Source of the DNA: Octopus vulgaris
Taxonomy: Eukaryota
DNA length: 62,000 nucleotides
Direction of reading: 5' to 3'
Assembly: GCA_951406725.2 (NCBI GenBank)
Contig: OX597822.1
Location: 43,482,001 to 43,544,000 of the forward strand
This document shows, piece by piece, positions 1,033 through 62,000 of this stretch; within the stretch, counting starts at the first letter, position 1, and every line of letters begins with the position of its first letter. The notes beneath the pieces are model-generated. The model saw only the letters and a program-made list of their open reading frames with translations, ran no database searches and was not told where the DNA came from. The translations under genes were made by a program, and so were the position numbers.

Positions 1033-1758
1033 ACAACGTAAGCTGGGCCACTCATATAAACACCAAAGTTGACATGGCCCGCAGAATGTGTTCCTGGATT
1101 CTCAGAACTTTCCAGTCGAGAGATATCCACACCATTATCCTTCTCTTCTCCACTTTTGCCCGACCCCACCTTGAATACTGTTGTCCACTGTGGTCTCCCC
1201 ACACAATACAAGGTATCAAAAAGTCGAAGCACCTCAAAGGGCAATCACAAAAAAGATAGATGGCATGACAGGCCTCGACTATTGGGGTCGACTAGAAAAG
1301 CTAAAACTCTATTCTCTCCAACGTCGTCGTGAGCGCTACATCATCTGCATGATGTGGAAAATATTCCATCAGCATTGCCCAAATGATGTTGGCATCACCT
1401 TTAAGGTACATCCAAGGCTTGGGCCCCGTGCCATCCGCCCAAAACAAAAATCGCACTCTCATCTCATAACAACAATACGGCACAATTATTTCACCTCAAT
1501 TGGCCCCGCTCTCTTTAACATTACACCAAAACACATTAAAACAGAAACTGACCCTATAGGGTTCAAGAAGTCTTTGGACAGATTCCTTCAAGAAATCCCG
1601 GATAAACCCCCTACACCCGGATATGTCTCTGTAAACAATAACTCTCTACTTGAGTGGGCCATAGTGCCCAAATTCTGATGAAAGACTTCACCAGGTGGTG
1701 CTATAAGTTAGACATGGCCTGGGCCAATAATGGCCGAAATATCAAAGTATCAAAGTAA
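1031..1758 (+). mobile_element. 5'-truncated CR1-clade LINE (RT C-terminus, 3'UTR, tail), frameshifted
   Basis: ORFs 912..1259 and 1181..1678 join across a frameshift: RPHLEYCCPLWSPH...EAPQRAITKKIDGMTGLDYWGRLEKLKLYSLQRRRERY; tail atcaaagtatcaaagt; (TA)n on both sides; homologous copy at 57471-58116. Confidence 0.85.
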
Positions 1759-9599: not shown

Positions 9600-9885
9600 G
9601 CCGACTTTCTTAGAAATGGCAGTCTTTCTTCGTTATAATCTATCTTGAATTGAATATTTTCATTAATTCCATTTAGTAGTATTTTAAATTCCTCAGGTTT
9701 TTCTATACTTTCATCCCAGAGGATGAAGCAGTCGTCGAGATATATTTTCCAGTTGTTCTGGATATAGGCGGAGAAATTGTTTTCATATTTTCGAGTGTTT
9801 TCTGTTAGAGTATTATTTCGAGGTATCCAATTACTAGGTTGGCAAAAGAAGGCACAGTACGCGTACCCATCGCTGTTCCCGATCT
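9600..9885 (-). pseudogene. Penelope-like RT fragment
   Basis: Minus frames give GTAMGTRTVPSFANLVIGYLEIIL and NWKIYLDDCFILWD...INENIQFKIDYNEERLPFL (frameshifted); not shown in the ORF track. Confidence 0.85.
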
Positions 9886-10639
9886 TTATCTATAATAATC
9901 ATTATTAAAAATAAAGTAATTGTTGTCTAAAATAGAACTTAGTCCTTCTATTATGAGTTCTTTATTTATGCGAGTTGGATACACACACACACACATACAT
10001 ATATATATAGATAGATATAGATATAGATATGGATATATATATAATACAGACAGATAGATAGATAGATAGATAGTTAGATAACAGGCAGGAAGATAGACGA
10101 TTCTATGCATGTTTATAAATATATATCGGTGTTCGGCCAAGCATTAGCTTTCTTTCTTGGTTCGACTGCTGGCCACTAAGCATCTCTTATATTCCTCTCT
10201 CATGACTTTCATCTCTTATGTTCATCTCCTATGTTCCTGTCTAAAGGCTTTCACTCTACCCACGTAAACTCATCTTGATTCGTCTTTATTGGTCGAAAGA
10301 CACCTGATATCATTTTCCTGTTATTTTCGTTTTTTTTTGTTGTTTACATTTGCTGGCTTTCTCCCAAGATATTTAATGTTCTTACCTTAGATTTTTGGGT
10401 CCAGCCAGATTTGTACAATCTGATGTGTAACCAGCCAAATCTGTGAGCATGATCTGGATACTTAACTGAGGAGGAACGGCTGCGACTGAACGTCTTTGTT
10501 TTATTTCTGTCCGTCTTTTAAATCCATTTTCTGGATTTATACATATGTGTGTGCGTGTGTGTGAGTGTGCATGTGTGTATGTGTGTATGTGTGCATGTAC
10601 ATGTGTGTGTGCCTCTGTGTGTTTGTGGTGTGTGTGCGC

Positions 10640-11109: not shown

Positions 11110-11295
11110 AATATTAGGGAATAAATCCAAATTTACAGGGAAAAATTAGATTTAGGATTGAATCCAATTTTATAGTAAAATATTATATTATATTAAATTA
11201 GAGACAAAACCACTATTATGCAAATTAAACAAAGAAAGACTTAAAACAATACATAAATTAATTTATATAAATTTAGAAATTTAACAATTATAAAT

Positions 11296-11356
11296 AACCA
11301 CTACGATTGTTTCATGTCTTATTTCAGCACATCTTTGAGACATTCTTCAGGTGGTT
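11296..11356 (-). ncRNA. Minimal type I hammerhead, intact core
   Basis: aaccac-CUGAAGA-augucu/18 nt/agacau-GAAAC-aauc-GUA-gugguu. Confidence 0.8.
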
Positions 11357-11404
11357 TCAAAACCTTCTTGGTTCATAGTTTAAAACTCGCCAAGAAGGTT
11401 TTGA

Positions 11405-11465
11405 AACCACCTGAAGAATGTCTCAAAGATGTGCTGAAATAAGACATGAAACGATCGTAGTGGTT
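11405..11465 (+). ncRNA. Minimal type I hammerhead, intact core, palindromic stem III
   Basis: aaccac-CUGAAGA-augucu/18 nt/agacau-GAAAC-gauc-GUA-gugguu; stem III ACGAUCGU is self-complementary; predicted cleavage after 11459. Confidence 0.85.
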
Positions 11466-11779
11466 ATTTATAATTGTTAATTTTCTAAATTTATATAAAT
11501 TAATTTATGTATTGTTTTAAGTCTTTCTTTGTTTGATTTGCATAATAGTGGTTTTGTCTCTAATTTAATATAATATATATATATATATATAATATCAAAG
11601 GGTATTCTGAAATATTAGAAATTTCCATTACCCGTGGCCTAGCGTGTAAAAATTTAGTCAATAGATTATATATTATTCATATAAATAGAGTTTAAAGTGG
11701 TTTGGAATTTAGCTGTTCTCTCTAGCGTGCAGGTTGTCTTATGGGGGATACTTCTTATGTCTTTAAATGTACACACACG

Positions 11780-17334: not shown

Positions 17335-18971
17335 CTGTGCGAGTACGTATAAAATATGTACGTATGTATATGGGGGTTCTATGTATATATACGTATATGC
17401 TCAACGGAATCAGTTGGGAAATTAACCTGATATTGCGTTATGAAAAATGCACCAAGGCAACATTGGAAAAAAATATCATGTTATATAAAGAAAACAAATA
17501 TGATAGTATTATTCCAAAAAACACTTAAAAATTATATGAATTAATGACCTAGACATTGTATAACACACGCAAATGGTTTGGAAAAAATATTATGGCCGCA
17601 TTAAATTCATACTTTAAAAAATATAAATGCAAAAAAAAAAATATATATATATATAAGGCAGTAATTCTTAATATTTTATCTAGGTGTTTAAGTAAGAAGT
17701 TACAGTTATAATATCGTGAACTGGAAGTTAAGGTGAATTAGTAAGACTAGACAGGAAAACATGAAATATAATGGCTACGTTTCGAATACATTATCTAAAA
17801 ATCTGACATAGAAATATATTTATCAAGAATACAAGGAGGGTGAGGTATTTTGTAAACAATCACAAAAACTTGAACAAATAAACAAGAACTATTTACTGTC
17901 TCCAGGGAAGTCAAGAAATGAGAAAAAAAGAGAAAAAAAATGAAGTCAGATGAAGTAACAGATATTTGTGAGTAAAAACGGTAAAACAACAACAGAAAAT
18001 ATCTTGCAAAAAACAAGAAATAAGAACTAAATTGAAATTGGCATTATGAAATATCAGACGGTGGTTAGAAAAGTCTAAAAGTTATCATATCGCAGCCAAT
18101 ATGTGACAAACGCAGAGCAGAGAGGTTTCAGAGAATGGCAAACTGAACACATTATAGAATATTAAGATTATCAGAGAGGAGGAGATTAACGTTAATCGCA
18201 CCAAACAATGCTGTCAAGGACCACCAGATAATCAAGACTTCCTTATATACGTGTCAAATGCAGGCCGTATGGTAAAAAAATGTTTCTAACGTAACAACGC
18301 CATCCTCAGTTCGGTTCCGCTGCACAACCTACGATTGTTAATGAGATTAAGTAAACCTGAACTGTGACGACCCTCGTATACACACATACACACACACACA
18401 CACACAGACACACACACACACACACACACACATACACACACGCACACGCACGCACACACACATGCATACACACACACAAACATACATACATAGATACATA
18501 CTGGCGTAGCAAGATACATACCAACACGTCTGAAGCAAAATATGGCTGAAATTGGGTTCTTGGGGGAGAATATGGAAATCCTTAATTCATGCTCTAAAAA
18601 TGATCACGATATGTAACAAAATAAAAATCTGCAAGACCTCCTTAAGATGTAATGGACAATGAACAAAACAAAATTCTTACCTTCACAACCTTGCTACCAA
18701 GTAGTTAGCCAACCAAAATTTAAAAAGAAAAAGTGTAAATCCATCCAACCATCCATCTATACCTAGCTAGCTAGCTAGCTACCTACCTACGTACCTACGT
18801 ACCTACCTACCTACCTACATACCTACCTACCTACCTTCCTACCTACCTACCTACCTACCTACCTACCTACCTACCTACCTACCTACCTACCTACCTACCT
18901 ACCTACCTACCTACCTACATACTTACCTACCTACCTACCTACCTACCTACCTACCTACATACCTACTTACC

Positions 18972-19011
<40 letters not shown>

Positions 19012-19235
19012 ATCAATATAGGGTGGCAAAAAAAAAATTTTGTAGAATTCTTTTGCCACCAGCGGCCTAGTAGGAAAAAATTAAATAGTCATAAACCATT
19101 TTTACGTTCAACATCACAATCAAGGAACGGCCATAATAGGCCATTCACCCACTAGAAATAACAGCCAAAAGCTTTAACCGCAAAATAACATTAATTCCGT
19201 AAACCAGGAGAAAATTGAAAAACTTTTACCCTGTA

Positions 19236-19342
19236 ATTTCTTAGACGATGCACCGTTTCATCTACCGTTTAATGGTAAACTAACCTGATTAAATTAAATC
19301 AAGCCAATCCACCATAGGCCCTTAGACTCATCAGTAAGAAAT
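19236..19342 (-). ncRNA. Type I hammerhead ribozyme, copy 1 (canonical core, extended stem II)
   Basis: auuucuua (19342-35) - CUGAUGA (19334-28) - gucua...uagau stem II - GAAA (19259-56) - C-ggugcauc-GUC - uaagaaau (19243-36); predicted cleavage between 19244 and 19243. Confidence 0.9.
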
Positions 19343-19726
19343 AGCCAAGTCGGAACAGATATTTTTCACGAGGCATTCCTCTTGCTACCTCGGCAATATC
19401 TGACCTAAAATTTTCAAATCGTCGCACTCGCGCCAAATTTATCGGCAGCAAATAAATATAAGCCACCGATTCCATTACGGAACTAACCAGAAAATTCATA
19501 ATTAATCAATATAGGGTGGCAAAAAAAATTTTGTAGAATTCTTTTGCCACCAGCGGCCTAGTAGGAAAAAATTAAATAGTCATAAACCATTTTTACGTTC
19601 AACATCACAATCAAGGAACGGCCATAATAGGCCATTCACCCACTAGAAATAACAGCCAAAAGCTTTAACCGCAAAATAACATTAATTCCGTAAACCAGGA
19701 GAAAATTGAAAAACTTTTACCCTGTA

Positions 19727-19833
19727 ATTTCTTAGACGATGCACCGTTTCATCTACCGTTTAATGGTAAACTAACCTGATTAAATTAAATCAAGCCAATC
19801 CACCATAGGCCCTTAGACTCATCAGTAAGAAAT
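19727..19833 (-). ncRNA. Type I hammerhead ribozyme, copy 2
   Basis: Identical to copy 1, offset by 491 bp; predicted cleavage between 19735 and 19734. Confidence 0.9.
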
Positions 19834-19991
19834 AGCCAAGTCGGAACAGATATTTTTCACGAGGCATTCCTCTTGCTACCTCGGCAATATCTGACCTAAA
19901 ATTTTCAAATCGTCGCACTCGCGCCAAATTTATCGGCAGCAAATAAATATAAGCCACCGATTCCATTACGGAACTAACCAGAAAATTCATA

Positions 19992-20024
<33 letters not shown>

Positions 20025-20439
20025 TATTTTTACAAAAAGAGGAGTGACAGTGACTTCGCAGTTTCTCGTGCTCCATTATGACCGCAGTTCTCTTGAACTA
20101 ATTATTGAATAAAAGCATCTAAGTGCATATGTACACACCCAACATACATACATACACACACACGTATACATATATATTGATAGATAGATATACACATGAA
20201 TGTATGTTCGCATGTATGGTAATATGTATGTGTCTATATATATATATATATCAAGGCATAGATTCACATATGCATACCATAGTATATGATTATAGACTTA
20301 ACAAAGGAGTCTATCATTGACGGATTGGTGATCATTCTCGTTTTTAATCATCATCGCCATTATTGCCGCCATTTCTCAGAGATTTCTCTGTGCAGCTCTG
20401 GACGTAATGTTGTCTTTGATGGCTTTTATCCATTGTCTA

Positions 20440-23622: not shown

Positions 23623-23797
23623 GGCGTAGGAGTGGCTGTGCGGTAAGTAGCTTGCTTACGAACCACATGGTTCCGAGTTCAGTCCCACTGCGTGGCACCT
23701 TGGGCAAGTGTCTTCTATTATAGCCTCTTGCCGACCAAAGCCTTGCGAGTGGATTTGGTAGACGGAAACTGAAAGAAGCCCGTCGTATATATGTATG

Positions 23798-45102: not shown

Positions 45103-45754
45103 TGCGCATTTGTATGTGTGTGTGCGTATGTATGTGTGAGTACGTTTGAATGTGTGTATGCGTGTGTGTGCATCTGTATGTATGTTTGGTGCGCGTGTGT
45201 TTGTATGTGTGTGTATGTTTGCATGTGTGTGTGCGCATGTGTGTGTATGTGCGTGTGTTTGTATGTGTGTGCGTTTGTATGTGTGTGTGTGCGTGTATGT
45301 GTGTGTGCGTTTAATGTGTGTGCATATGTGTGTATGTACGTGCGCTTGTGTCTATGGAAGTTTGTATGTATGTGTATGTGCGTGCTTTTGTATGTATATG
45401 TGTGCGTGTGTGCGTATGTGTCTGTGCGTTTGTATGTATATGTGTGATTGCGTTTGTATGTATGTATGTCTTTGTATGTGTGTGTGCGCGTGTGTGTATG
45501 TGCGCGCGTTTGTATGTGTGTGTGTGCATGCGTTTGTATGTGTCTGTGTTTGTATGTGTGTGTGTTCACCTTGGACAAGTGACTTTTACTATAGGCACGG
45601 GCCAACCAAAGCCTTATGAGTGGATTTGGTAGACAGTCGGTTGTTGTTATAGAAGGTGGGCAGGGCAACATACTCCCTGAGCGGGAGGCCAATCCGCCAA
45701 TATTTGCAGTTAGGTGGTCTGGTGTAATATAAAATGAAATGTTTCACACAATCC

Positions 45755-46280
45755 CGCTGCGTGCCGCCTTGGGGGAAGTGTCTTCTACTATAGCATCGGG
45801 CCGACCAAAGCCTTGTCAGTGAATTTCGTCGAGAGAAACGGAAAAGAAACCCGTGGTATATATATATACGTATATATATCTCACCTTCTCTCTCTGTTTT
45901 ATTTCCCCCTTATTCCTTTCTGTCGAAGAGCGTCGGCTCGAAACGTGAAAGCCTTTTGTATTTTTCCCGAGAATAAAAGTAATACACTTGCTTGTTTTTT
46001 CTACTCCTGTCTTCGTTTGTGATTTTCTGTACATGTGAACTATGTATGTATATGTGTGAGTGTGTGTATGTGTGTGTGTTTGTGTATTTGTGTCTGTTCG
46101 TCTCCCCACCACCACCGCCTGACAACCGTGTTCGTCTTTTTACGATGTAGCAGTTCGGTAAAAATACCGACAGAATAAGTACATGGCGTAGAAAGAATAC
46201 GTCGATTTGTTCGACTAAAAACCCCTTAAGGTGGTGTCCCAGCATGCCCCCTGTCAAATAAGTAAAACAAACAAATGAAT
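45755..46280 (+). mobile_element. SINE family A with a PLE terminal fragment (~45880-46035) nested in its microsatellite
   Basis: SINE head and core to 45860, then cttt-CTGTCGA-a-gagc/gtcg/gctc-GAAACGTG (45916-45951), then the SINE 3' half resumes at ~46040. Confidence 0.75.
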
Positions 46281-47708: not shown

Positions 47709-47850
47709 TCACAGGAGTGGGTGTGTGATAAGTTGCTTGCTTACCAACCACATGGTTCTTGGTTCAGTCCCACTGCATTTCTACAATGGCCTCGGATCGA
47801 CCAAAATCGTGTGAGTGGATTTGGTAGATAGAAACTGAAAGAAGCCCGTC

Positions 47851-47900
<50 letters not shown>

Positions 47901-49523: not shown

Positions 49524-49619
49524 CGGGAAGCTTTATGAAAATAAACAAAAGACGAAGGCAGATGGAGTACAAACAAACAATTGTATTAGTATGGCGCCCA
49601 GGAATATAAATAAAACAAG

Positions 49620-49657
49620 TCTTTTACGTTTCGAGCCTACGCTCTTCAACAGAAAGA
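49620..49657 (-). ncRNA. Variant hammerhead-like motif in the PLE terminus (CUGUUGA core)
   Basis: ucuuu-CUGUUGA-a-gagc/guag/gcuc-GAAAC-GUA-aaaga: 5-bp stem I, 4-bp stem II, loopless ACGU stem III. Confidence 0.6.
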
Positions 49658-50417
49658 TACACAGAAAAGACACACGGAGAGAAACAAAGAGAGAAAAAAA
49701 TGCGTGCAGAGGCTAGCGAATCAACATGGCGATCTGATTTCGGCCAGAAGTCAAAGATCAAACGTGAGACGCAAGAGCGAAATTAGAGGAGATAACAGGG
49801 TCAAATGACCTCGCCCCAACATAAGTGTGTGTGTGTGTATAAGAGAGTATGTAGTGCGTATGAGAGGTCTGGACGTGCGTATGTATATATGATGTGATGT
49901 GTAAAGTCGTATGGTGTAGTGTAGAGAGAGGAGATGAGGGGGAGAGGGGGAGTGAGGAAGAGGGGGGAAAGAAAAGAGGAGGGAAAAAGGAAAGAGGAGA
50001 AGGGGAGGGAGAAGGGGAAAGGTGAGAGTGAGGAGGGGGAGGGGGAGAATGAAAGAAGGAGGGGTGGTGAGGGTGAGATGAGATGAGGGGGTGGAGGGGG
50101 AAATGAGATGAGATGAGGGTGGTGGGTGGAGGGGAAAAGGAGATGAGGGTGGAGTGTGAGGGGGAGAAGGAAAGAGGAGAAGAGGAGGGAGGAGGAGGGG
50201 GAAGGGGGAGAAGGAAGGAGAAGAGAAGAGGAGGGAGGATAGAGGGAGGGGGAGAGGGAGAGAGAAGGGGAGTGAGGGAGCAGAGAGAAAGAGGGAAGGG
50301 GAAGAGGGAAGAAGAAAGAGGGAAGAAGGGAAGAGGAGGGAAAGGGAGTAGGGGTGAAAGGATGAAGGACTGAAGAGAAGTAGGGGTCGGGAGGAGGTTA
50401 GATGAGGAGGGGGGAGA

Positions 50418-51925
50418 GTTGAAACCAAATGGCGTAAAAGAGCGAAGAGAGAAGATTAATCCCTGTTCACGGCGCAAACGGGAATCCGGATGGCCTCTGT
50501 GCAAGGACAAACCGAACACAGACAGGTGTTGCAAGGAGTGACCGGTGGAGCGGAAATGGCGTGAGACCGGTGTGTCGTTGGCAAGGCGGACGTCACGGAG
50601 GTGTTCCGCGAACCGGTCAGCCAAGCGGCGTCCCGTTTGTCCGATGTACAGGGAATGGCAGAGAGAGCAGGAGACGCAAAAGATGATATTGCTGGAGGTG
50701 CAGGTGAAGGAGTTGATGATGCGATAGGGTCGATGATGGGTGCCAGTGAAAAGGGTGGTGTTGGAGAGGTAAGGGCAAGTGCGGCAACGTGGGCGGGAGC
50801 AGGGGAACGAGCCAGGTTGGGAGGTAGGATCAGGGAAGGAGCTGTGGACCAAAAGGTCTCGTAGGTTATGGGCTCGTTTGAAGGAGGGGAGGGGTCGGTT
50901 AGGGAAGAGGTGTGAAGTGGACGGGTCGGACTGGAGATGCCGGAAAGATCGAAGAATGGTGCGTTGGAGAGGTAGGGTCGTGGGGTGGTAAGTGAGCGGA
51001 AAAGGGAGGCGGGTTCGGGGAGAGAGAGCAGATGCACGGTCTACGGAACGTGCTCTGGCAAGGGCGGTGTGGATAGTGGAGAGGGGGTATCCACGTAGGA
51101 TGAAGTGGTGAGCCAAACGTTGAGACTGAGTCTCAAAGTCATGGTCGTCACTACAGAGCCTACGTAGACGGAGGAATTGGGAATAGGGGATGGAAAGCTT
51201 AGTGTGCTTTGGGTGGGAGGAAGAGAAGTTGAGGTATGAGTGTGAGTCTGTGTGTTTGTAGTGAATGGAGGTGGTAAGAGTGGAGTGATGAATGCTGACC
51301 GAAATGTCGAGGAAGGAGACAGAGGTGTTGGAGATGGAGGTGAAGTGGAGGGCTGGATGGAAGGATTGAACGAAAGAGAGGAAGGAATCTAGATGTTCAC
51401 GGGAGAGTGAGGTGGCACCGATAATGTCAATGTAACGACCGTATAGTTCAGGAGTGGGACCAGTGAAATTAGAGAATATTTGGGCCTCAACATAGCCAAC
51501 GAACAGGTTCGCATAGTTGGGGCCCATTCGCGTTCCCATGGCCACTCCCGAGGTATGTTGGTAGAACTCGCCCGCGAACGAGAAGCAGTTGAGAGTAAGG
51601 ACAAGTTCGGCCAGGCGAATGAGTGTGGTGTCAGGTTCAGGGTTGGGACGGAGGTCGAGAAAGTGTTGAAGTGCCCGCAGTCCTTCGTGGTGAGGGATAA
51701 CGGTATAGAGGCTCTGGATAAGCATAGTAAAAAGGATTTTGGGAGCCAGGAGGAAAGGAGAAATAGTTGAAAAGCCAGAGAGCATGGTTGGTATCGTGGA
51801 TGTGGGAGGGAAGAGACGCCACTAGGGGGGCAAGGACACGGTCGAGGTATTTAGAGATGAGCTCTGTGGGGCAGTTATAGGTGGAGACGATGGGGCGGCC
51901 AGGGTTGTTGGGTTTGTGGATTTTG
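50418..51925 (-). pseudogene. PLE RT + GIY-YIG endonuclease, probably inactive
   Basis: IPKIHKPNNPGRPIVS (upstream, frameshifted), LFTMLIQSLYT, GVAMGTRMGPNYANLF, RYIDIIG (one Asp of YIDD missing), FLDI, CSRPRCRTC linker, NIIF..CSLC..YIGQT, EH...HF, ending PFGFN. Confidence 0.92.
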
Positions 51926-51987
<62 letters not shown>

Positions 51988-51994
51988 ATATATA

Positions 51995-58116: not shown

Positions 58117-58135
58117 TATATATATATATATATAT

Positions 58136-58571
58136 AAATAGATCCGCTATGGTATAGCCACTAAAAATTGTTTCCAAGGAGAAATAACACAACATTTAAC
58201 GAACGGCAAGTGAAAAATAACGAAAAAATAGATTAACTCTGGACAATTGTTTCATTATTAATGTAGTATGCAATTTTACTTACATAACATCTATAATTCA
58301 TCAGCAGAAGTTTGTCTAAAATACAATTTATTAAATCGCACGTTAAAATTTGACGCAGCGTCAAACACACGTGCGGTTCAATCGATTGTATTAGCAGCTA
58401 TGATTCAAATTTCCCCGCCAAAAGTATGATAAGACTTCTGGAAACGAATACTGCATAAAATATTTACTGCAGTATAATTAAATTTACAAATGAGGGTGAA
58501 AAATTTGATATTAATTGTGTTATTTCTCCTTGGGAACAATTTTTAGTGGCTATACCGTAGCGGATCTATTT
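58136..58571. mobile_element. 436-bp MITE with ~57-bp TIRs, superfamily unassigned
   Basis: aaatagatccgctatggtatagccactaaaaattgtttccaaggagaaataacacaa and its near-exact reverse complement ending at 58571. Confidence 0.8.
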
Positions 58572-58720
58572 TTAGCACTAGAGTCGACCACATAGTGGTT
58601 ACTCTCTCATATTTATGTATAAATTTGTATTGTATCCCTGGCTTTTATGTGCTAAGCCACTTGGTGTTAAATTGATGGTATTATTAAATTAATATCAAAT
58701 TTTTCACCCTCATTTGTAAA

Positions 58721-59130: not shown

Positions 59131-59620
59131 CGTTATATATTAAGACGGGAGGCTCTACTATTATTCACAAAGACAGAGAAATGAAGTCTCTGAAGACCCT
59201 CATTGTAGAATTACAATATAATTTACTTCATATTAAAAATATTTATATTATCGTTATTTCAAAATTATACTACGGTTATGTTCGATTATAACAACATACA
59301 AGTGTGTTTTAATGGCTAAAGTGATTCTACCGCGTTGTGACTGATTTAGTCACGAAAGGTTATCTGTTGGCCGAGGTGTGGCTATGGGGTGAGAGGGCTG
59401 CTCCGCAACCACATGGTTCTGGGTTTCGATCCACTGCGCGGCACGTTTGGCAATTGTCTTCTACTAAAGTAACGGGCTGACCGAAGTCTTGGGAGTAGAT
59501 TCGGTAGGCGGAAACTGAATGAAGATCATCGTATACATCAATCCATCCATCCATCCATCCATCCATCCATCCATCCATCCATCCATCCATACATACATAC
59601 ATACATACATACACACACAA

Positions 59621-61438: not shown

Positions 61439-61512
<74 letters not shown>

Positions 61513-61667
61513 GACGGGCTTCTTTCAGTTTCCGACTACCAAATCCACTCACAATGGTTTGGTCTACTCGAGACTATACGAGAAGACACATGCCCAAGGT
61601 GGCACGCAGTTGGAGTGAACTATGAGGTTGGTAAGCAAGCCACTTACCACACAGCCACACTTATACG
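61240..61667 (-). mobile_element. SINE family A
   Basis: Full reverse-complement family-A structure with internal (CA)n(TA)n. Confidence 0.85.
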
Positions 61668-61837
61668 TTGTTATAATCGAACATAACCGCAGCATAATTT
61701 TGATATAAATACGTAAAGATATACATGTGTATCTGTTACTCTCTTTTAAAAAAATTTTTTTTTTACTTGTTTCAGTCATTTGACTGAGGCCATGCTGGAG
61801 CACCGCCTTTAGTCGAGCAAATCGACCCCGAGACTTA

Positions 61838-62000
61838 TTCCTTGATTGTGATGTTGAACTTATAAATGGTCTATGACTATTTAATTTTTTCCCACTAGGC
61901 CGCTGGTGGCAAATAAATTCTACGAAATTTTTTGCCACCCTATATTGATTAATTATGAATTTTCTGGTTAATTCCGTAATGGAATCGACGGCTTATATTT
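61838..62000 (+). mobile_element. Third, diverged copy of the 491-bp HHR unit, running off the window end
   Basis: Reverse complement of ~19127-19011 continuing through the unit junction into ~19503-19455; about 10 substitutions in ~160 bp. Confidence 0.9.

What the first reader, a model, noticed from the sequence alone, without database searches (positions are those of the whole stretch)
19011..19993. 491-bp tandem dimer with a hammerhead in each unit: candidate cephalopod retrozyme / circRNA-generating element
Seen: two head-to-tail units, identical by eye except one A-run, between (TA)n tracts, with no transposase or RT ORF. On the minus strand each unit has a complete type I HHR: perfect 8-bp stem I (auuucuua/uaagaaau), canonical CUGAUGA and GAAA, 5-bp stem II base, paired stem III and a GUC triplet. 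Predicted cuts at 19735/19734 and 19244/19243 would release an exact 491-nt monomer. Established: non-LTR retrozymes and related HHR satellites (newt satellite 2, Schistosoma SM-alpha, Dolichopoda pDo500, and those reported in corals and mussels) are tandem HHR repeats whose transcripts self-cleave to monomers, can circularise, and are thought to be mobilised by PLE RT. Inference: this is such an element. I do not recall one described from octopus, and the unit is longer than most I know. Alternative: a tandem pLTR shed by a PLE.
Basis: partly seen in the sequence, partly recalled or inferred. Interest (0 to 1): 0.93.

Follow-up and report, generated by a model that had tools for sequence, protein, structure and literature searches.

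The report
Tandem hammerhead-ribozyme repeat (non-LTR retrozyme)
A non-coding 491-bp repeat, present as an exact head-to-tail pair inside a (TA)n microsatellite, carries a hammerhead self-cleaving ribozyme motif in each copy and fits the already described animal "retrozymes" that make small circular RNAs, so it is a real but fairly ordinary new example.

Summary
Window 19010-19993 is an exact two-unit tandem repeat of 493 + 491 bp. The units are identical except for an A10/A8 run, and the repeat is seamless between two (TA)n tracts. On the minus strand each unit has a full type I hammerhead: 8-bp helix I, CUGAUGA, GAAA, a 4-bp helix III with palindromic UGCA loop, and GUC. The cut sites lie exactly 491 nt apart. 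A hammerhead descriptor found none this good in 200 shuffles of the window.

Three caveats apply:
- Rfam Hammerhead_1 scores 22 bits, below the 34-bit gathering score.
- Helix II is 68 nt long.
- Its closing pair is G10.1•U11.1, not the highly conserved G-C.

The unit is non-coding and 37% GC. It folds far better on the ribozyme strand (z -5.7 against -2.3). A third, diverged, truncated copy lies at 61838-62000. A 5'-truncated Penelope-like RT/GIY-YIG element and two other hammerhead-like inverted repeats in the window also abut (TA)n tracts.

Best reading: a non-LTR retrozyme, probably mobilised by a microsatellite-targeting Penelope-like element from a circular or multimeric RNA. Self-cleavage, circRNA formation and the cephalopod origin could not be tested. 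The kind is known, including in molluscs, so this is a new member and interest is moderate.

The parts
19010..19502 (-). Repeat unit 1 (493 bp, A10 run). On the ribozyme (minus) strand this is the downstream unit.
19503..19993 (-). Repeat unit 2 (491 bp, A8 run). On the ribozyme strand this is the upstream unit.
19727..19833 (-). Upstream type I hammerhead. Helix I 19833-19826 / 19734-19727; core CUGAUGA 19825-19819; helix II 19818-19751; GAAA 19750-19747; helix III 19747-19736; C17 at 19735. Predicted cut 19735|19734.
19236..19342 (-). Downstream type I hammerhead. Helix I 19342-19335 / 19243-19236; core 19334-19328; helix II 19327-19260; GAAA 19259-19256; helix III 19256-19245; C17 at 19244. 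Predicted cut 19244|19243.
19244..19734 (-). Predicted 491-nt RNA released by the two cuts. Its 5' UAAGAAAU pairs with AUUUCUUA near its 3' end, so the two ends are brought together.
   Evidence: Linear fold -147.1 kcal/mol, z -5.7. Circular fold -142 kcal/mol, 63% of bases paired.
19272..19315 (-). 19-bp hairpin extension of helix II; the same feature lies at 19763-19806. Six of its 19 pairs are G-U, so it forms only in the ribozyme-strand RNA.
   Evidence: pairs counted from the sequence.
18975..19008 (.). (AT)17 tract abutting the left end of the insert.
19994..20027 (.). (AT)n tract abutting the right end of the insert.
61838..62000 (+). Third copy of the family, 93% identical. Its ribozyme strand is the + strand. 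It is truncated at its 5' side next to a SINE-like repeat and runs off the window end. It reads straight through the unit-to-unit junction.
50415..51927 (-). Context, not part of the repeat. A 5'-truncated Penelope-like element carrying RT, a CX4CX2C linker and a GIY-YIG endonuclease. It is a candidate family for the mobilising enzyme. Its 5' end abuts (TA)n at 51929-51994.

Best explanation
This is a non-autonomous, non-coding retroelement of the metazoan non-LTR retrozyme kind, inserted as an exact dimer into a (TA)n microsatellite.

**Proposed working, with shown and inferred steps marked.**
1. The minus strand is transcribed through both units. This is inferred. The strand has several U runs of four or more, which argues against Pol III.
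2. [quoted passage not shown] The motif is shown; catalysis is inferred. The palindromic UGCA loop of helix III would also allow the two ribozymes to act as a dimer.
3. The 8-bp helix I holds the two ends of the monomer together. This is shown by folding. A host tRNA ligase of the RtcB type closes it into a circle, as inferred from published retrozymes.
4. The circle, or an uncleaved multimer, is copied by the RT of a Penelope-like element. Priming is at a nick in a (TA)n tract and gives head-to-tail cDNA copies. This is inferred from three facts. The insert is exactly two seamless units. Its ends lie about 235-259 nt from the cut sites at the AU-rich patch UAUAUUGAUUAAUUAU. PLE-type elements in the same window also sit at (TA)n.
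For: - **Exact dimer.** Period 491, units identical but for one homopolymer.
- **Full hammerhead in each unit.** It matches the whole Rfam model 1-45 and is far beyond chance (0 of 200 shuffles at this quality).
- **Ribozyme fold is accessible.** The ribozyme-competent fold is -35.4 kcal/mol against an MFE of -39.3.
- **Strand-specific structure.** Sense strand -147 kcal/mol, z -5.7; antisense -90 kcal/mol, z -2.3. As circles, -142 against -85. Six of 19 pairs in the helix II hairpin are G-U.
- **Non-coding.** Only a 66-aa ORF, with no homologue. GC is 37%.
- **Dispersed family.** A 93%-identical, oppositely oriented, truncated copy lies 42 kb away and reads through the unit junction.
- **Microsatellite association.** Both ends abut (TA)n. 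Such tracts cover 4.7% of the window. The PLE fragment and both other hammerhead-like inverted repeats each have an end within 4 bp of a tract, where the chance for any one site is 0.013.
- **Linker motif.** The PLE carries the CX2-5CxxC linker proposed to mediate microsatellite bias (PMC8557442).
- **Fit to published definitions.** All these features match the published description of non-LTR retrozymes and their co-occurrence with PLEs (PMC7229834; preprint 10.64898/2026.07.22.740005).
Against: - Rfam score is 22 bits, below the 34-bit gathering score.
- The 10.1-11.1 pair is G-U instead of the very conserved G-C.
- Helix II is 68 nt with no hairpin loop near the core, so the usual loop 1/loop 2 contact of canonical metazoan type I hammerheads (helix I 6 bp, helix II 4 bp) cannot form as such.
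- The thermodynamic MFE prefers an alternative pairing of GAUGA with UCGUC.
- Only three copies are visible. No copy was found outside the window, so conservation of the ribozyme across copies is untested.
- There are no expression data.
- TA tracts are so frequent here that one insertion inside a tract has a chance probability of about 0.05.
Confidence: 0.62

Rival explanations
1. Fossil retrozyme. The repeat descends from a retrozyme family, but this ribozyme variant (G-U at 10.1-11.1, 68-nt helix II) no longer cleaves usefully. On this reading the locus is a silent, dead insertion that makes no circRNA.
For: Sub-threshold Rfam score. Departure from the most conserved helix II pair. Absence of canonical loop-loop contacts. 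An MFE that competes with the active fold. Published PLE-type hammerheads cleave poorly in vitro.
Against: The two units are identical over 491 bp, so the insertion is young or homogenised. The core has all the invariant residues. Helix III is longer than in amphibian motifs that do work. G10.1 itself is retained. A U-U mismatch at this position still supports activity in natural ribozymes.
Confidence: 0.2
2. Solo or tandem pseudo-LTRs left behind by a Penelope-like element, with no independent life of their own.
For: PLE pLTRs carry type I hammerheads and PLEs insert as partial tandems. A PLE copy and PLE-like inverted hammerhead structures are in the window. In Xenopus, retrozyme families sit next to PLE pLTRs in trees.
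Against: No RT/EN ORF adjoins the repeat. BLAST of the unit against the window finds nothing at the PLE at 50.4-51.9 kb or in its flanks. That PLE's 3' region has no canonical hammerhead core. The ribozyme here has a canonical-type paired helix III rather than the minimal PLE type. The junction is seamless and the insert is exactly two units, with no 30-40-bp tail.
Confidence: 0.1
3. A DNA-level tandem duplication or small satellite array with no RNA intermediate, such as replication slippage or unequal exchange. On this reading the hammerhead is a passive passenger.
For: Only two units are present. The region is extremely rich in microsatellites that promote slippage.
Against: Unequal exchange between the flanking (TA)n tracts would leave TA repeats between the units, and the junction has none. 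A dispersed copy in the opposite orientation reads through the same junction. RNA structure is strand-specific.
Confidence: 0.05
4. Assembly artefact. The dimer results from mis-joining reads of a single-unit repeat.
For: The units are identical. Repeats flanked by microsatellites are hard to assemble.
Against: The two units differ in A-run length, and the third copy independently shows the unit-to-unit junction. Raw reads are not available, so this cannot be tested further here.
Confidence: 0.03

Closest known systems
Metazoan non-LTR retrozymes (Cervera and de la Pena 2020, PMC7229834), e.g. Mytilus galloprovincialis 350-390-bp repeats and Acropora millepora 220-240-bp repeats
   Same: Head-to-tail repeats with one type I hammerhead per unit. 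No ORF, LTR, PBS or PPT. GC below 50%. A highly self-paired predicted RNA. Co-occurrence with PLEs. Dimers are an accepted array size.
   Different: The unit is 491 bp, above the usual 170-400 nt. Helix II is 68 nt with an internal loop instead of a short hairpin. The closing pair is G-U. Helix I is 8 bp. No expression or cleavage data exist. Copy number is unknown.
Minimal hammerheads in pseudo-LTRs of Penelope-like elements (Cervera and de la Pena 2014, PMC4209133)
   Same: Type I topology, a palindromic helix III loop, tandem or inverted arrangements, and association with microsatellite targets.
   Different: Not attached to an RT/EN ORF. Helix III is a real 4-bp stem. No similarity to the PLE in the window.
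Amphibian satellite 2 / axolotl HHR_Amex retrozymes (330-350-bp repeats)
   Same: A tandem type I hammerhead with a palindromic tetraloop on helix III, capable of dimeric action. One family has a weakened base of helix II.
   Different: Those form very large arrays (about 120,000 copies in the axolotl). Here a dimer plus one dispersed copy is seen in 62 kb. Helix III is longer here.
Plant LTR retrozymes (PMC4918200)
   Same: Two hammerheads flank a non-coding RNA that is cut and circularised, and the element is non-autonomous.
   Different: Plant elements have type III hammerheads inside LTRs, a PBS and PPT, 4-bp TSDs, and are mobilised by Gypsy. None of these applies here.

Membership tests
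Hammerhead ribozyme, type I (Rfam RF00163) | Conserved core: C3-U4-G5-A6-N7-G8-A9, G12-A13-A14, the A15.1-U16.1 pair, and H17 (not G) before the cut | tested here: met
   CUGAUGA, GAAA, an A-U closing helix III, and GUC are read on the minus strand in both units. The Rfam alignment covers model positions 1-45.
Hammerhead ribozyme, type I (Rfam RF00163) | Three helices around the core, with helix I open-ended | tested here: met
   Helix I is 8 bp. Helix II has a 5-bp base plus a 19-bp extension. Helix III is 4 bp with a UGCA loop.
Hammerhead ribozyme, type I (Rfam RF00163) | G10.1-C11.1 Watson-Crick pair closing helix II | tested here: not met
   The pair here is a G10.1-U11.1 wobble. It is described as the most conserved pair after 15.1-16.1.
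Hammerhead ribozyme, type I (Rfam RF00163) | Score at or above the curated Rfam gathering threshold | tested here: not met
   22 bits against 34. The shortfall is mainly due to the long insertion in helix II and the U at 11.1.
Hammerhead ribozyme, type I (Rfam RF00163) | Loop 1 / loop 2 tertiary contact | tested here: inconclusive
   No hairpin loop lies close to the core. Internal loops in helix I (after 8 bp) and helix II (after 5 bp) could substitute, but this is only a guess.
Hammerhead ribozyme, type I (Rfam RF00163) | Site-specific self-cleavage | not testable with these tools
   Needs in vitro transcription.
Metazoan non-LTR retrozyme | Head-to-tail repeats of a few hundred bp, each with a type I hammerhead | tested here: met
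   Two units of 491/493 bp with a hammerhead in each. Published ranges are 150-450 bp and 51-972 bp.
Metazoan non-LTR retrozyme | No protein-coding capacity and no LTR/PBS/PPT | tested here: met
   Only a 66-aa ORF, with no homologue. Three substitutions in its first 15 codons in copy 3 are all non-synonymous (alignment). PBS and PPT were not searched for specifically.
Metazoan non-LTR retrozyme | Low GC (below 50%) and a stable, highly self-paired RNA | tested here: met
   GC is 36.9%. z is -5.7 and 63% of bases are paired.
Metazoan non-LTR retrozyme | Multi-copy, dispersed in the genome | tested here: inconclusive
   One further diverged copy is in the window. The genome was not available, and public contig scans found nothing.
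Metazoan non-LTR retrozyme | Target-site duplications, when present | tested here: inconclusive
   (TA)n lies on both sides. This could be a split microsatellite or a long TSD.
Metazoan non-LTR retrozyme | Co-existence with PLEs in the same genome | tested here: met
   A PLE RT/GIY-YIG copy lies at 50415-51927.
Metazoan non-LTR retrozyme | Expressed as linear and circular monomer RNA | not testable with these tools
   No transcriptome access.
PLE pseudo-LTR | The repeat flanks, or is continuous with, a PLE RT/EN ORF and is homologous to a PLE terminus | tested here: not met
   No ORF adjoins the repeat, and there is no BLAST similarity between the unit and the PLE region of the window. Only one PLE copy was available for comparison.
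Plant-type LTR retrozyme | Type III hammerheads inside LTRs | tested here: not met
   The topology is type I, with helix I open.

The most novel reading that the evidence does not exclude
The locus may preserve a direct footprint of how animal retrozymes move. It is an exactly two-unit, seamless insert whose ends are circularly permuted relative to the ribozyme cut sites. Both ends fall on the same AU-rich patch, just 3' of a 13-bp hairpin, and the insert sits inside a (TA)n tract. PLE fragments in the same window show the same microsatellite association. This would point to rolling-circle, target-primed reverse transcription of a circRNA by a microsatellite-targeting Penelope-like element. 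In addition, the hammerhead may be an active variant with a new peripheral architecture: a 68-nt helix II, internal-loop contacts and a G-U closing pair.
Probability: 0.25. Interest if true: 0.55.

Novelty: new member of a known kind. Interest (0 to 1): 0.35.

Why it matters
If the source is indeed a cephalopod, this would add that class to the animals known to carry retrozyme-type circRNA generators. I found no paper in the searched library that describes one. It would also supply a compact natural cassette for making a 491-nt circle.

Two further points have more general interest:
- The insert geometry (exact dimer, permuted ends, (TA)n target shared with PLE copies) bears on the open question of which enzyme mobilises animal retrozymes.
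- The long helix II offers a test of how much peripheral variation a hammerhead tolerates.

Neither point changes the established picture.

Tried and rejected
- **Rfam at gathering threshold over the whole window:** no hit. The motif appears only in an E-value search.
- **Exact-pattern scans for other copies:** two scans of metagenome contigs, one with the unit junction and one with the ribozyme 5' half, and one of viral contigs. All returned zero.
- **Reaching other genomic copies through the 66-aa ORF in the unit:** no homologue.
- **Identifying the organism:**
  - The 675-aa PLE ORF and its best hit are not on record as exact products.
  - The RT-like ORF at 1181-1678 has an 85% relative only in an unnamed JGI metagenome contig, and a 64% relative in assembly GCA_024449705.1.
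  - Those accessions appear in no paper.
  - The 'octopus' attribution therefore remains unverified.
- **Pfam on four window ORFs, including the PLE ORF:** no family at E <= 0.01. The PLE identity rests on homologues that carry RVT_1 and GIY-YIG domains and on tblastn.
- **Hammerhead in the PLE's 3' region:** no canonical core. I saw a degenerate UUGAAGAG...CGAAAC string near 49610-49640, but it does not fit the motif.
- **Structure conservation between copy 3 and the unit:** 10 substitutions only. Five of the 8 at paired sites are G-U to Watson-Crick transitions, but most partners lie outside the window. This is too few to count as evidence.
- **tRNA-like heads for the neighbouring SINE:** none.

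Full report

Yes. Tandem Repeats Finder reports one array at 19005-19993 with period 491, 2.0 copies and 99% matches. Aligning the two halves shows every column identical except a 2-nt length difference in one A-run, A10 against A8. After equalising that run the two units are the same string. The exact limits are 19010-19502 (493 bp) and 19503-19993 (491 bp).

The unit-to-unit junction (..TTCATAAT|TAATCAAT..) is seamless. The array lies directly between (AT)17 at 18975-19008 and an (AT)n tract starting at 19994. A (TACC)53 tract lies further left.

**2. The ribozyme motif**

Each unit reads as follows on the minus strand:
- Helix I, 5' strand: AUUUCUUA.
- Core: CUGAUGA.
- Helix II: 68 nt, with a GUCUA...UAGAU base.
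- GAAA.
- Helix III: ACGG-UGCA-UCGU.
- C17 and the cut site.
- Helix I, 3' strand: UAAGAAAU.

This is the complete type I topology with all invariant core residues.

Rfam does not report the motif at its gathering score. In an E-value search of the 1.1-kb region, Hammerhead_1 matches both copies over the whole model (1-45) with 22 bits against a cut-off of 34, E = 0.017. The shortfall comes from a long insertion in helix II and from U instead of C at 11.1.

As a chance test I wrote a descriptor: core, GAAA, three helices, non-G at position 17. I ran it on the window and on 200 dinucleotide-preserving shuffles. It finds 5 hits against 0.04 expected. At the quality of the two motifs here it finds 2 against 0 in 200.

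The ribozyme-competent secondary structure of a 127-nt segment costs -35.4 kcal/mol. The MFE is -39.3 and pairs GAUGA with UCGUC instead. That gap is ordinary for hammerheads, because the energy model does not credit the core.

**3.

- The pair closing helix II is G10.1-U11.1. The 10.1-11.1 pair is described as the most conserved pair of the motif after 15.1-16.1, although natural ribozymes with a U-U mismatch there are active (PMC3088659).
- Helix II is not the 4-bp stem plus loop of canonical metazoan type I hammerheads (PMC4209133). It has 5 bp, then a 7+7-nt internal loop, then a 19-bp hairpin at 19272-19315. The usual loop 1/loop 2 contact therefore cannot form as such.
- Helix III has three pairs beyond A15.1-U16.1 and a palindromic UGCA loop. 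This resembles the more stable invertebrate type and also permits the dimeric mode known from tandem hammerheads.

**4. Evidence that the RNA, not the DNA, is the constrained object**

- The 491-nt monomer folds to -147.1 kcal/mol (z = -5.7) on the ribozyme strand. Its complement reaches only -89.8 kcal/mol (z = -2.3).
- Folded as circles the values are -142 and -85 kcal/mol.
- Six of the 19 pairs of the helix II hairpin are G-U. The hairpin therefore exists only in the sense RNA and is not a DNA palindrome.
- In the monomer fold the 5'-terminal UAAGAAAU pairs with AUUUCUUA near the 3' end. The two cleavage ends are thus held side by side, which is the geometry needed for ligation.
- The unit is non-coding. 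The only ORF is 66 aa and has no homologue among 5.8 billion proteins. In the third copy all three substitutions in its first 15 codons change the amino acid.
- GC content is 36.9%.

**5. Family and surroundings**

BLAST of the unit against the window finds a third copy at 61838-62000. It is 93% identical and in the opposite orientation. It is cut off on its sense-5' side, where it meets a SINE-like repeat that occurs many times in the window, and it runs off the window end. It reads straight through the unit-to-unit junction. That junction is therefore internal to the family's continuous sequence and not an accident of this locus.

The window also holds the following:
- A 5'-truncated Penelope-like element at 50415-51927 (minus strand). 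It covers residues 289-801 of an 806-aa relative and has one frameshift. It carries RT, a CX4CX2C linker and a GIY-YIG endonuclease.
- A 188-nt, 98% inverted repeat at 11184-11371 / 11390-11577, with a hammerhead-like motif in each arm pointing outward.
- A third hammerhead-like motif at 58242-58304 with an inverted partner.

The last two have palindromic minimal helices III (CGAUCG, CAAUUG). That is the PLE type, which is often found as pairs on opposite strands.

None of these elements resembles the 491-bp unit. All of them have an end within 4 bp of a (TA)>=8 tract. Such tracts cover 4.7% of the window, and a random site lies within 2 bp of a tract edge with probability 0.013. The literature reports microsatellite insertion bias for PLEs, including (TA)n, and attributes it tentatively to the CX2-5CxxC linker (PMC8557442).

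**6. Most likely mechanism**

The element meets the published description of metazoan non-LTR retrozymes (PMC7229834):
- short head-to-tail repeats, each with a type I hammerhead;
- no ORF, LTR, PBS or PPT;
- GC below 50%;
- a stable self-paired RNA;
- co-existence with PLEs.

Following that model, a minus-strand transcript through both units would be cut at the two GUC sites. The 491-nt monomer would be closed by a host tRNA ligase. The circle would then serve as template for a PLE reverse transcriptase.

Two sequence facts add something specific. First, the insert ends lie about 235-259 nt from the cut sites. A linear, ribozyme-cut monomer therefore cannot have been the template; it was a circle or an uncleaved multimer. 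Second, both ends fall at the same phase, on the AU-rich patch UAUAUUGAUUAAUUAU just 3' of a 13-bp hairpin, and the flanks are (TA)n. This fits priming and termination by microhomology between a nicked TA tract and that patch, after two rounds of copying.

These steps are inference and none is demonstrated. The sense strand contains many U runs of four or more, so Pol III is an unlikely polymerase for a multimeric precursor. This too is inference.

**7. Rivals**

- **Fossil element whose ribozyme variant no longer works.** This is the main one, because of the G-U pair, the odd helix II and the lack of any expression data.
- **PLE pseudo-LTR remnant.** There is no adjoining ORF and no similarity to the one PLE available. 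However, a 2026 preprint argues that retrozymes derive from pLTRs, so the two readings are not far apart.
- **Pure DNA-level duplication.** This is disfavoured by the seamless junction, the dispersed copy and the strand-specific structure.
- **Assembly artefact.** This cannot be excluded without reads, but the units differ in the A-run and copy 3 shows the junction independently.

**8. What could not be done**

- No copy was found outside the window, so conservation and covariation of the ribozyme are untested.
- The organism could not be named. The low GC (34.9%) and extreme microsatellite density say nothing either way.

**9. Novelty**

The kind is well described in cnidarians, a mussel, amphibians and other animals, and is stated to occur in many invertebrate phyla.
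- Unit lengths up to 972 bp are reported.
- The giant squid genome paper lists 235 Rfam Hammerhead_1 hits without further analysis.
- Full-text searches found no paper describing a cephalopod retrozyme.

This is therefore a new member of a known kind, with an unusual helix II. Interest is 0.35.

Noticed in passing
window 11184-11577: A near-perfect inverted repeat (two 188-nt arms, 98% complementary, 18-nt spacer). Each arm holds a hammerhead-like motif pointing outward: AACCAC-CUGAAGA-AUGUCU..AGACAU-GAAA-CGAUCG-UA-GUGGUU, at 11411-11459 (+) and 11350-11302 (-). The right end abuts (TA)n at 11573-11591. It looks like two head-to-head 3' ends of a Penelope-like element with minimal hammerheads. 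Rfam does not see it at E <= 1, and fold z-scores are weak (-1.1 and -1.4).
   Followed up: partly
window 58242-58304 (-), with partner 58515-58574: A further hammerhead-like motif: CUGAUGA, a 5-bp A-U-rich helix II with a long loop, GAAA, and a palindromic CAAUUG helix III. Its 3' side reaches (TA)n at 58117-58136. A 60-nt inverted copy of its tail (95% identical) lies at 58515-58574. The fold z-score is -2.1.
   Followed up: partly
window 50415-51927 (-), ORF 49758-51785: A 5'-truncated Penelope-like element with RT, a CX4CX2C linker and GIY-YIG, and one frameshift near 51750. The reading frame has lost its stop and runs on through about 500 nt of C/T-rich low-complexity sequence. The 5' end abuts (TA)n at 51929-51994. 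No canonical hammerhead lies in its 3' region. Its closest named relatives, at about 50% identity, are from corals, a periwinkle and sharks.
   Followed up: partly
window 9817-9921 (-): A short second fragment of a PLE-type RT: tblastn to P0016 residues 402-436, 49% identity, E = 1.5e-5.
   Followed up: no
window 61500-61837 and e.g. 23632-23796, 2583-2747, 47717-47863, 45749-45868, 59376-59538: A SINE-like dispersed repeat family with many copies in the window (70-84% identity). One copy directly abuts the truncated third retrozyme copy. ARAGORN finds no tRNA-like head.
   Followed up: partly
whole window: Extreme microsatellite load. There are 84 pure (TA)>=8 tracts (4.7% of all bases), plus (TACC)53 at 18760-18972 and long (TATG)n, (TG)n, (AAT)n and (CTT/CT)-rich tracts. 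These produce dozens of spurious sub-threshold microRNA matches in Rfam E-value searches.
   Followed up: partly
window 1181-1678 (+): A 165-aa ORF resembling the C-terminal part of a non-LTR retrotransposon protein. It has 158 homologues, none with a Pfam domain. The best is 85% identical on an unnamed 1-kb JGI metagenome contig (sample 3300037538).
   Followed up: partly
window 19299-19499 and 19790-19990 (-): A 66-aa ATG ORF on the ribozyme strand of each unit that runs into the hammerhead. It has no homologue, and all differences in the third copy are non-synonymous, so it is probably a chance ORF.
   Followed up: yes
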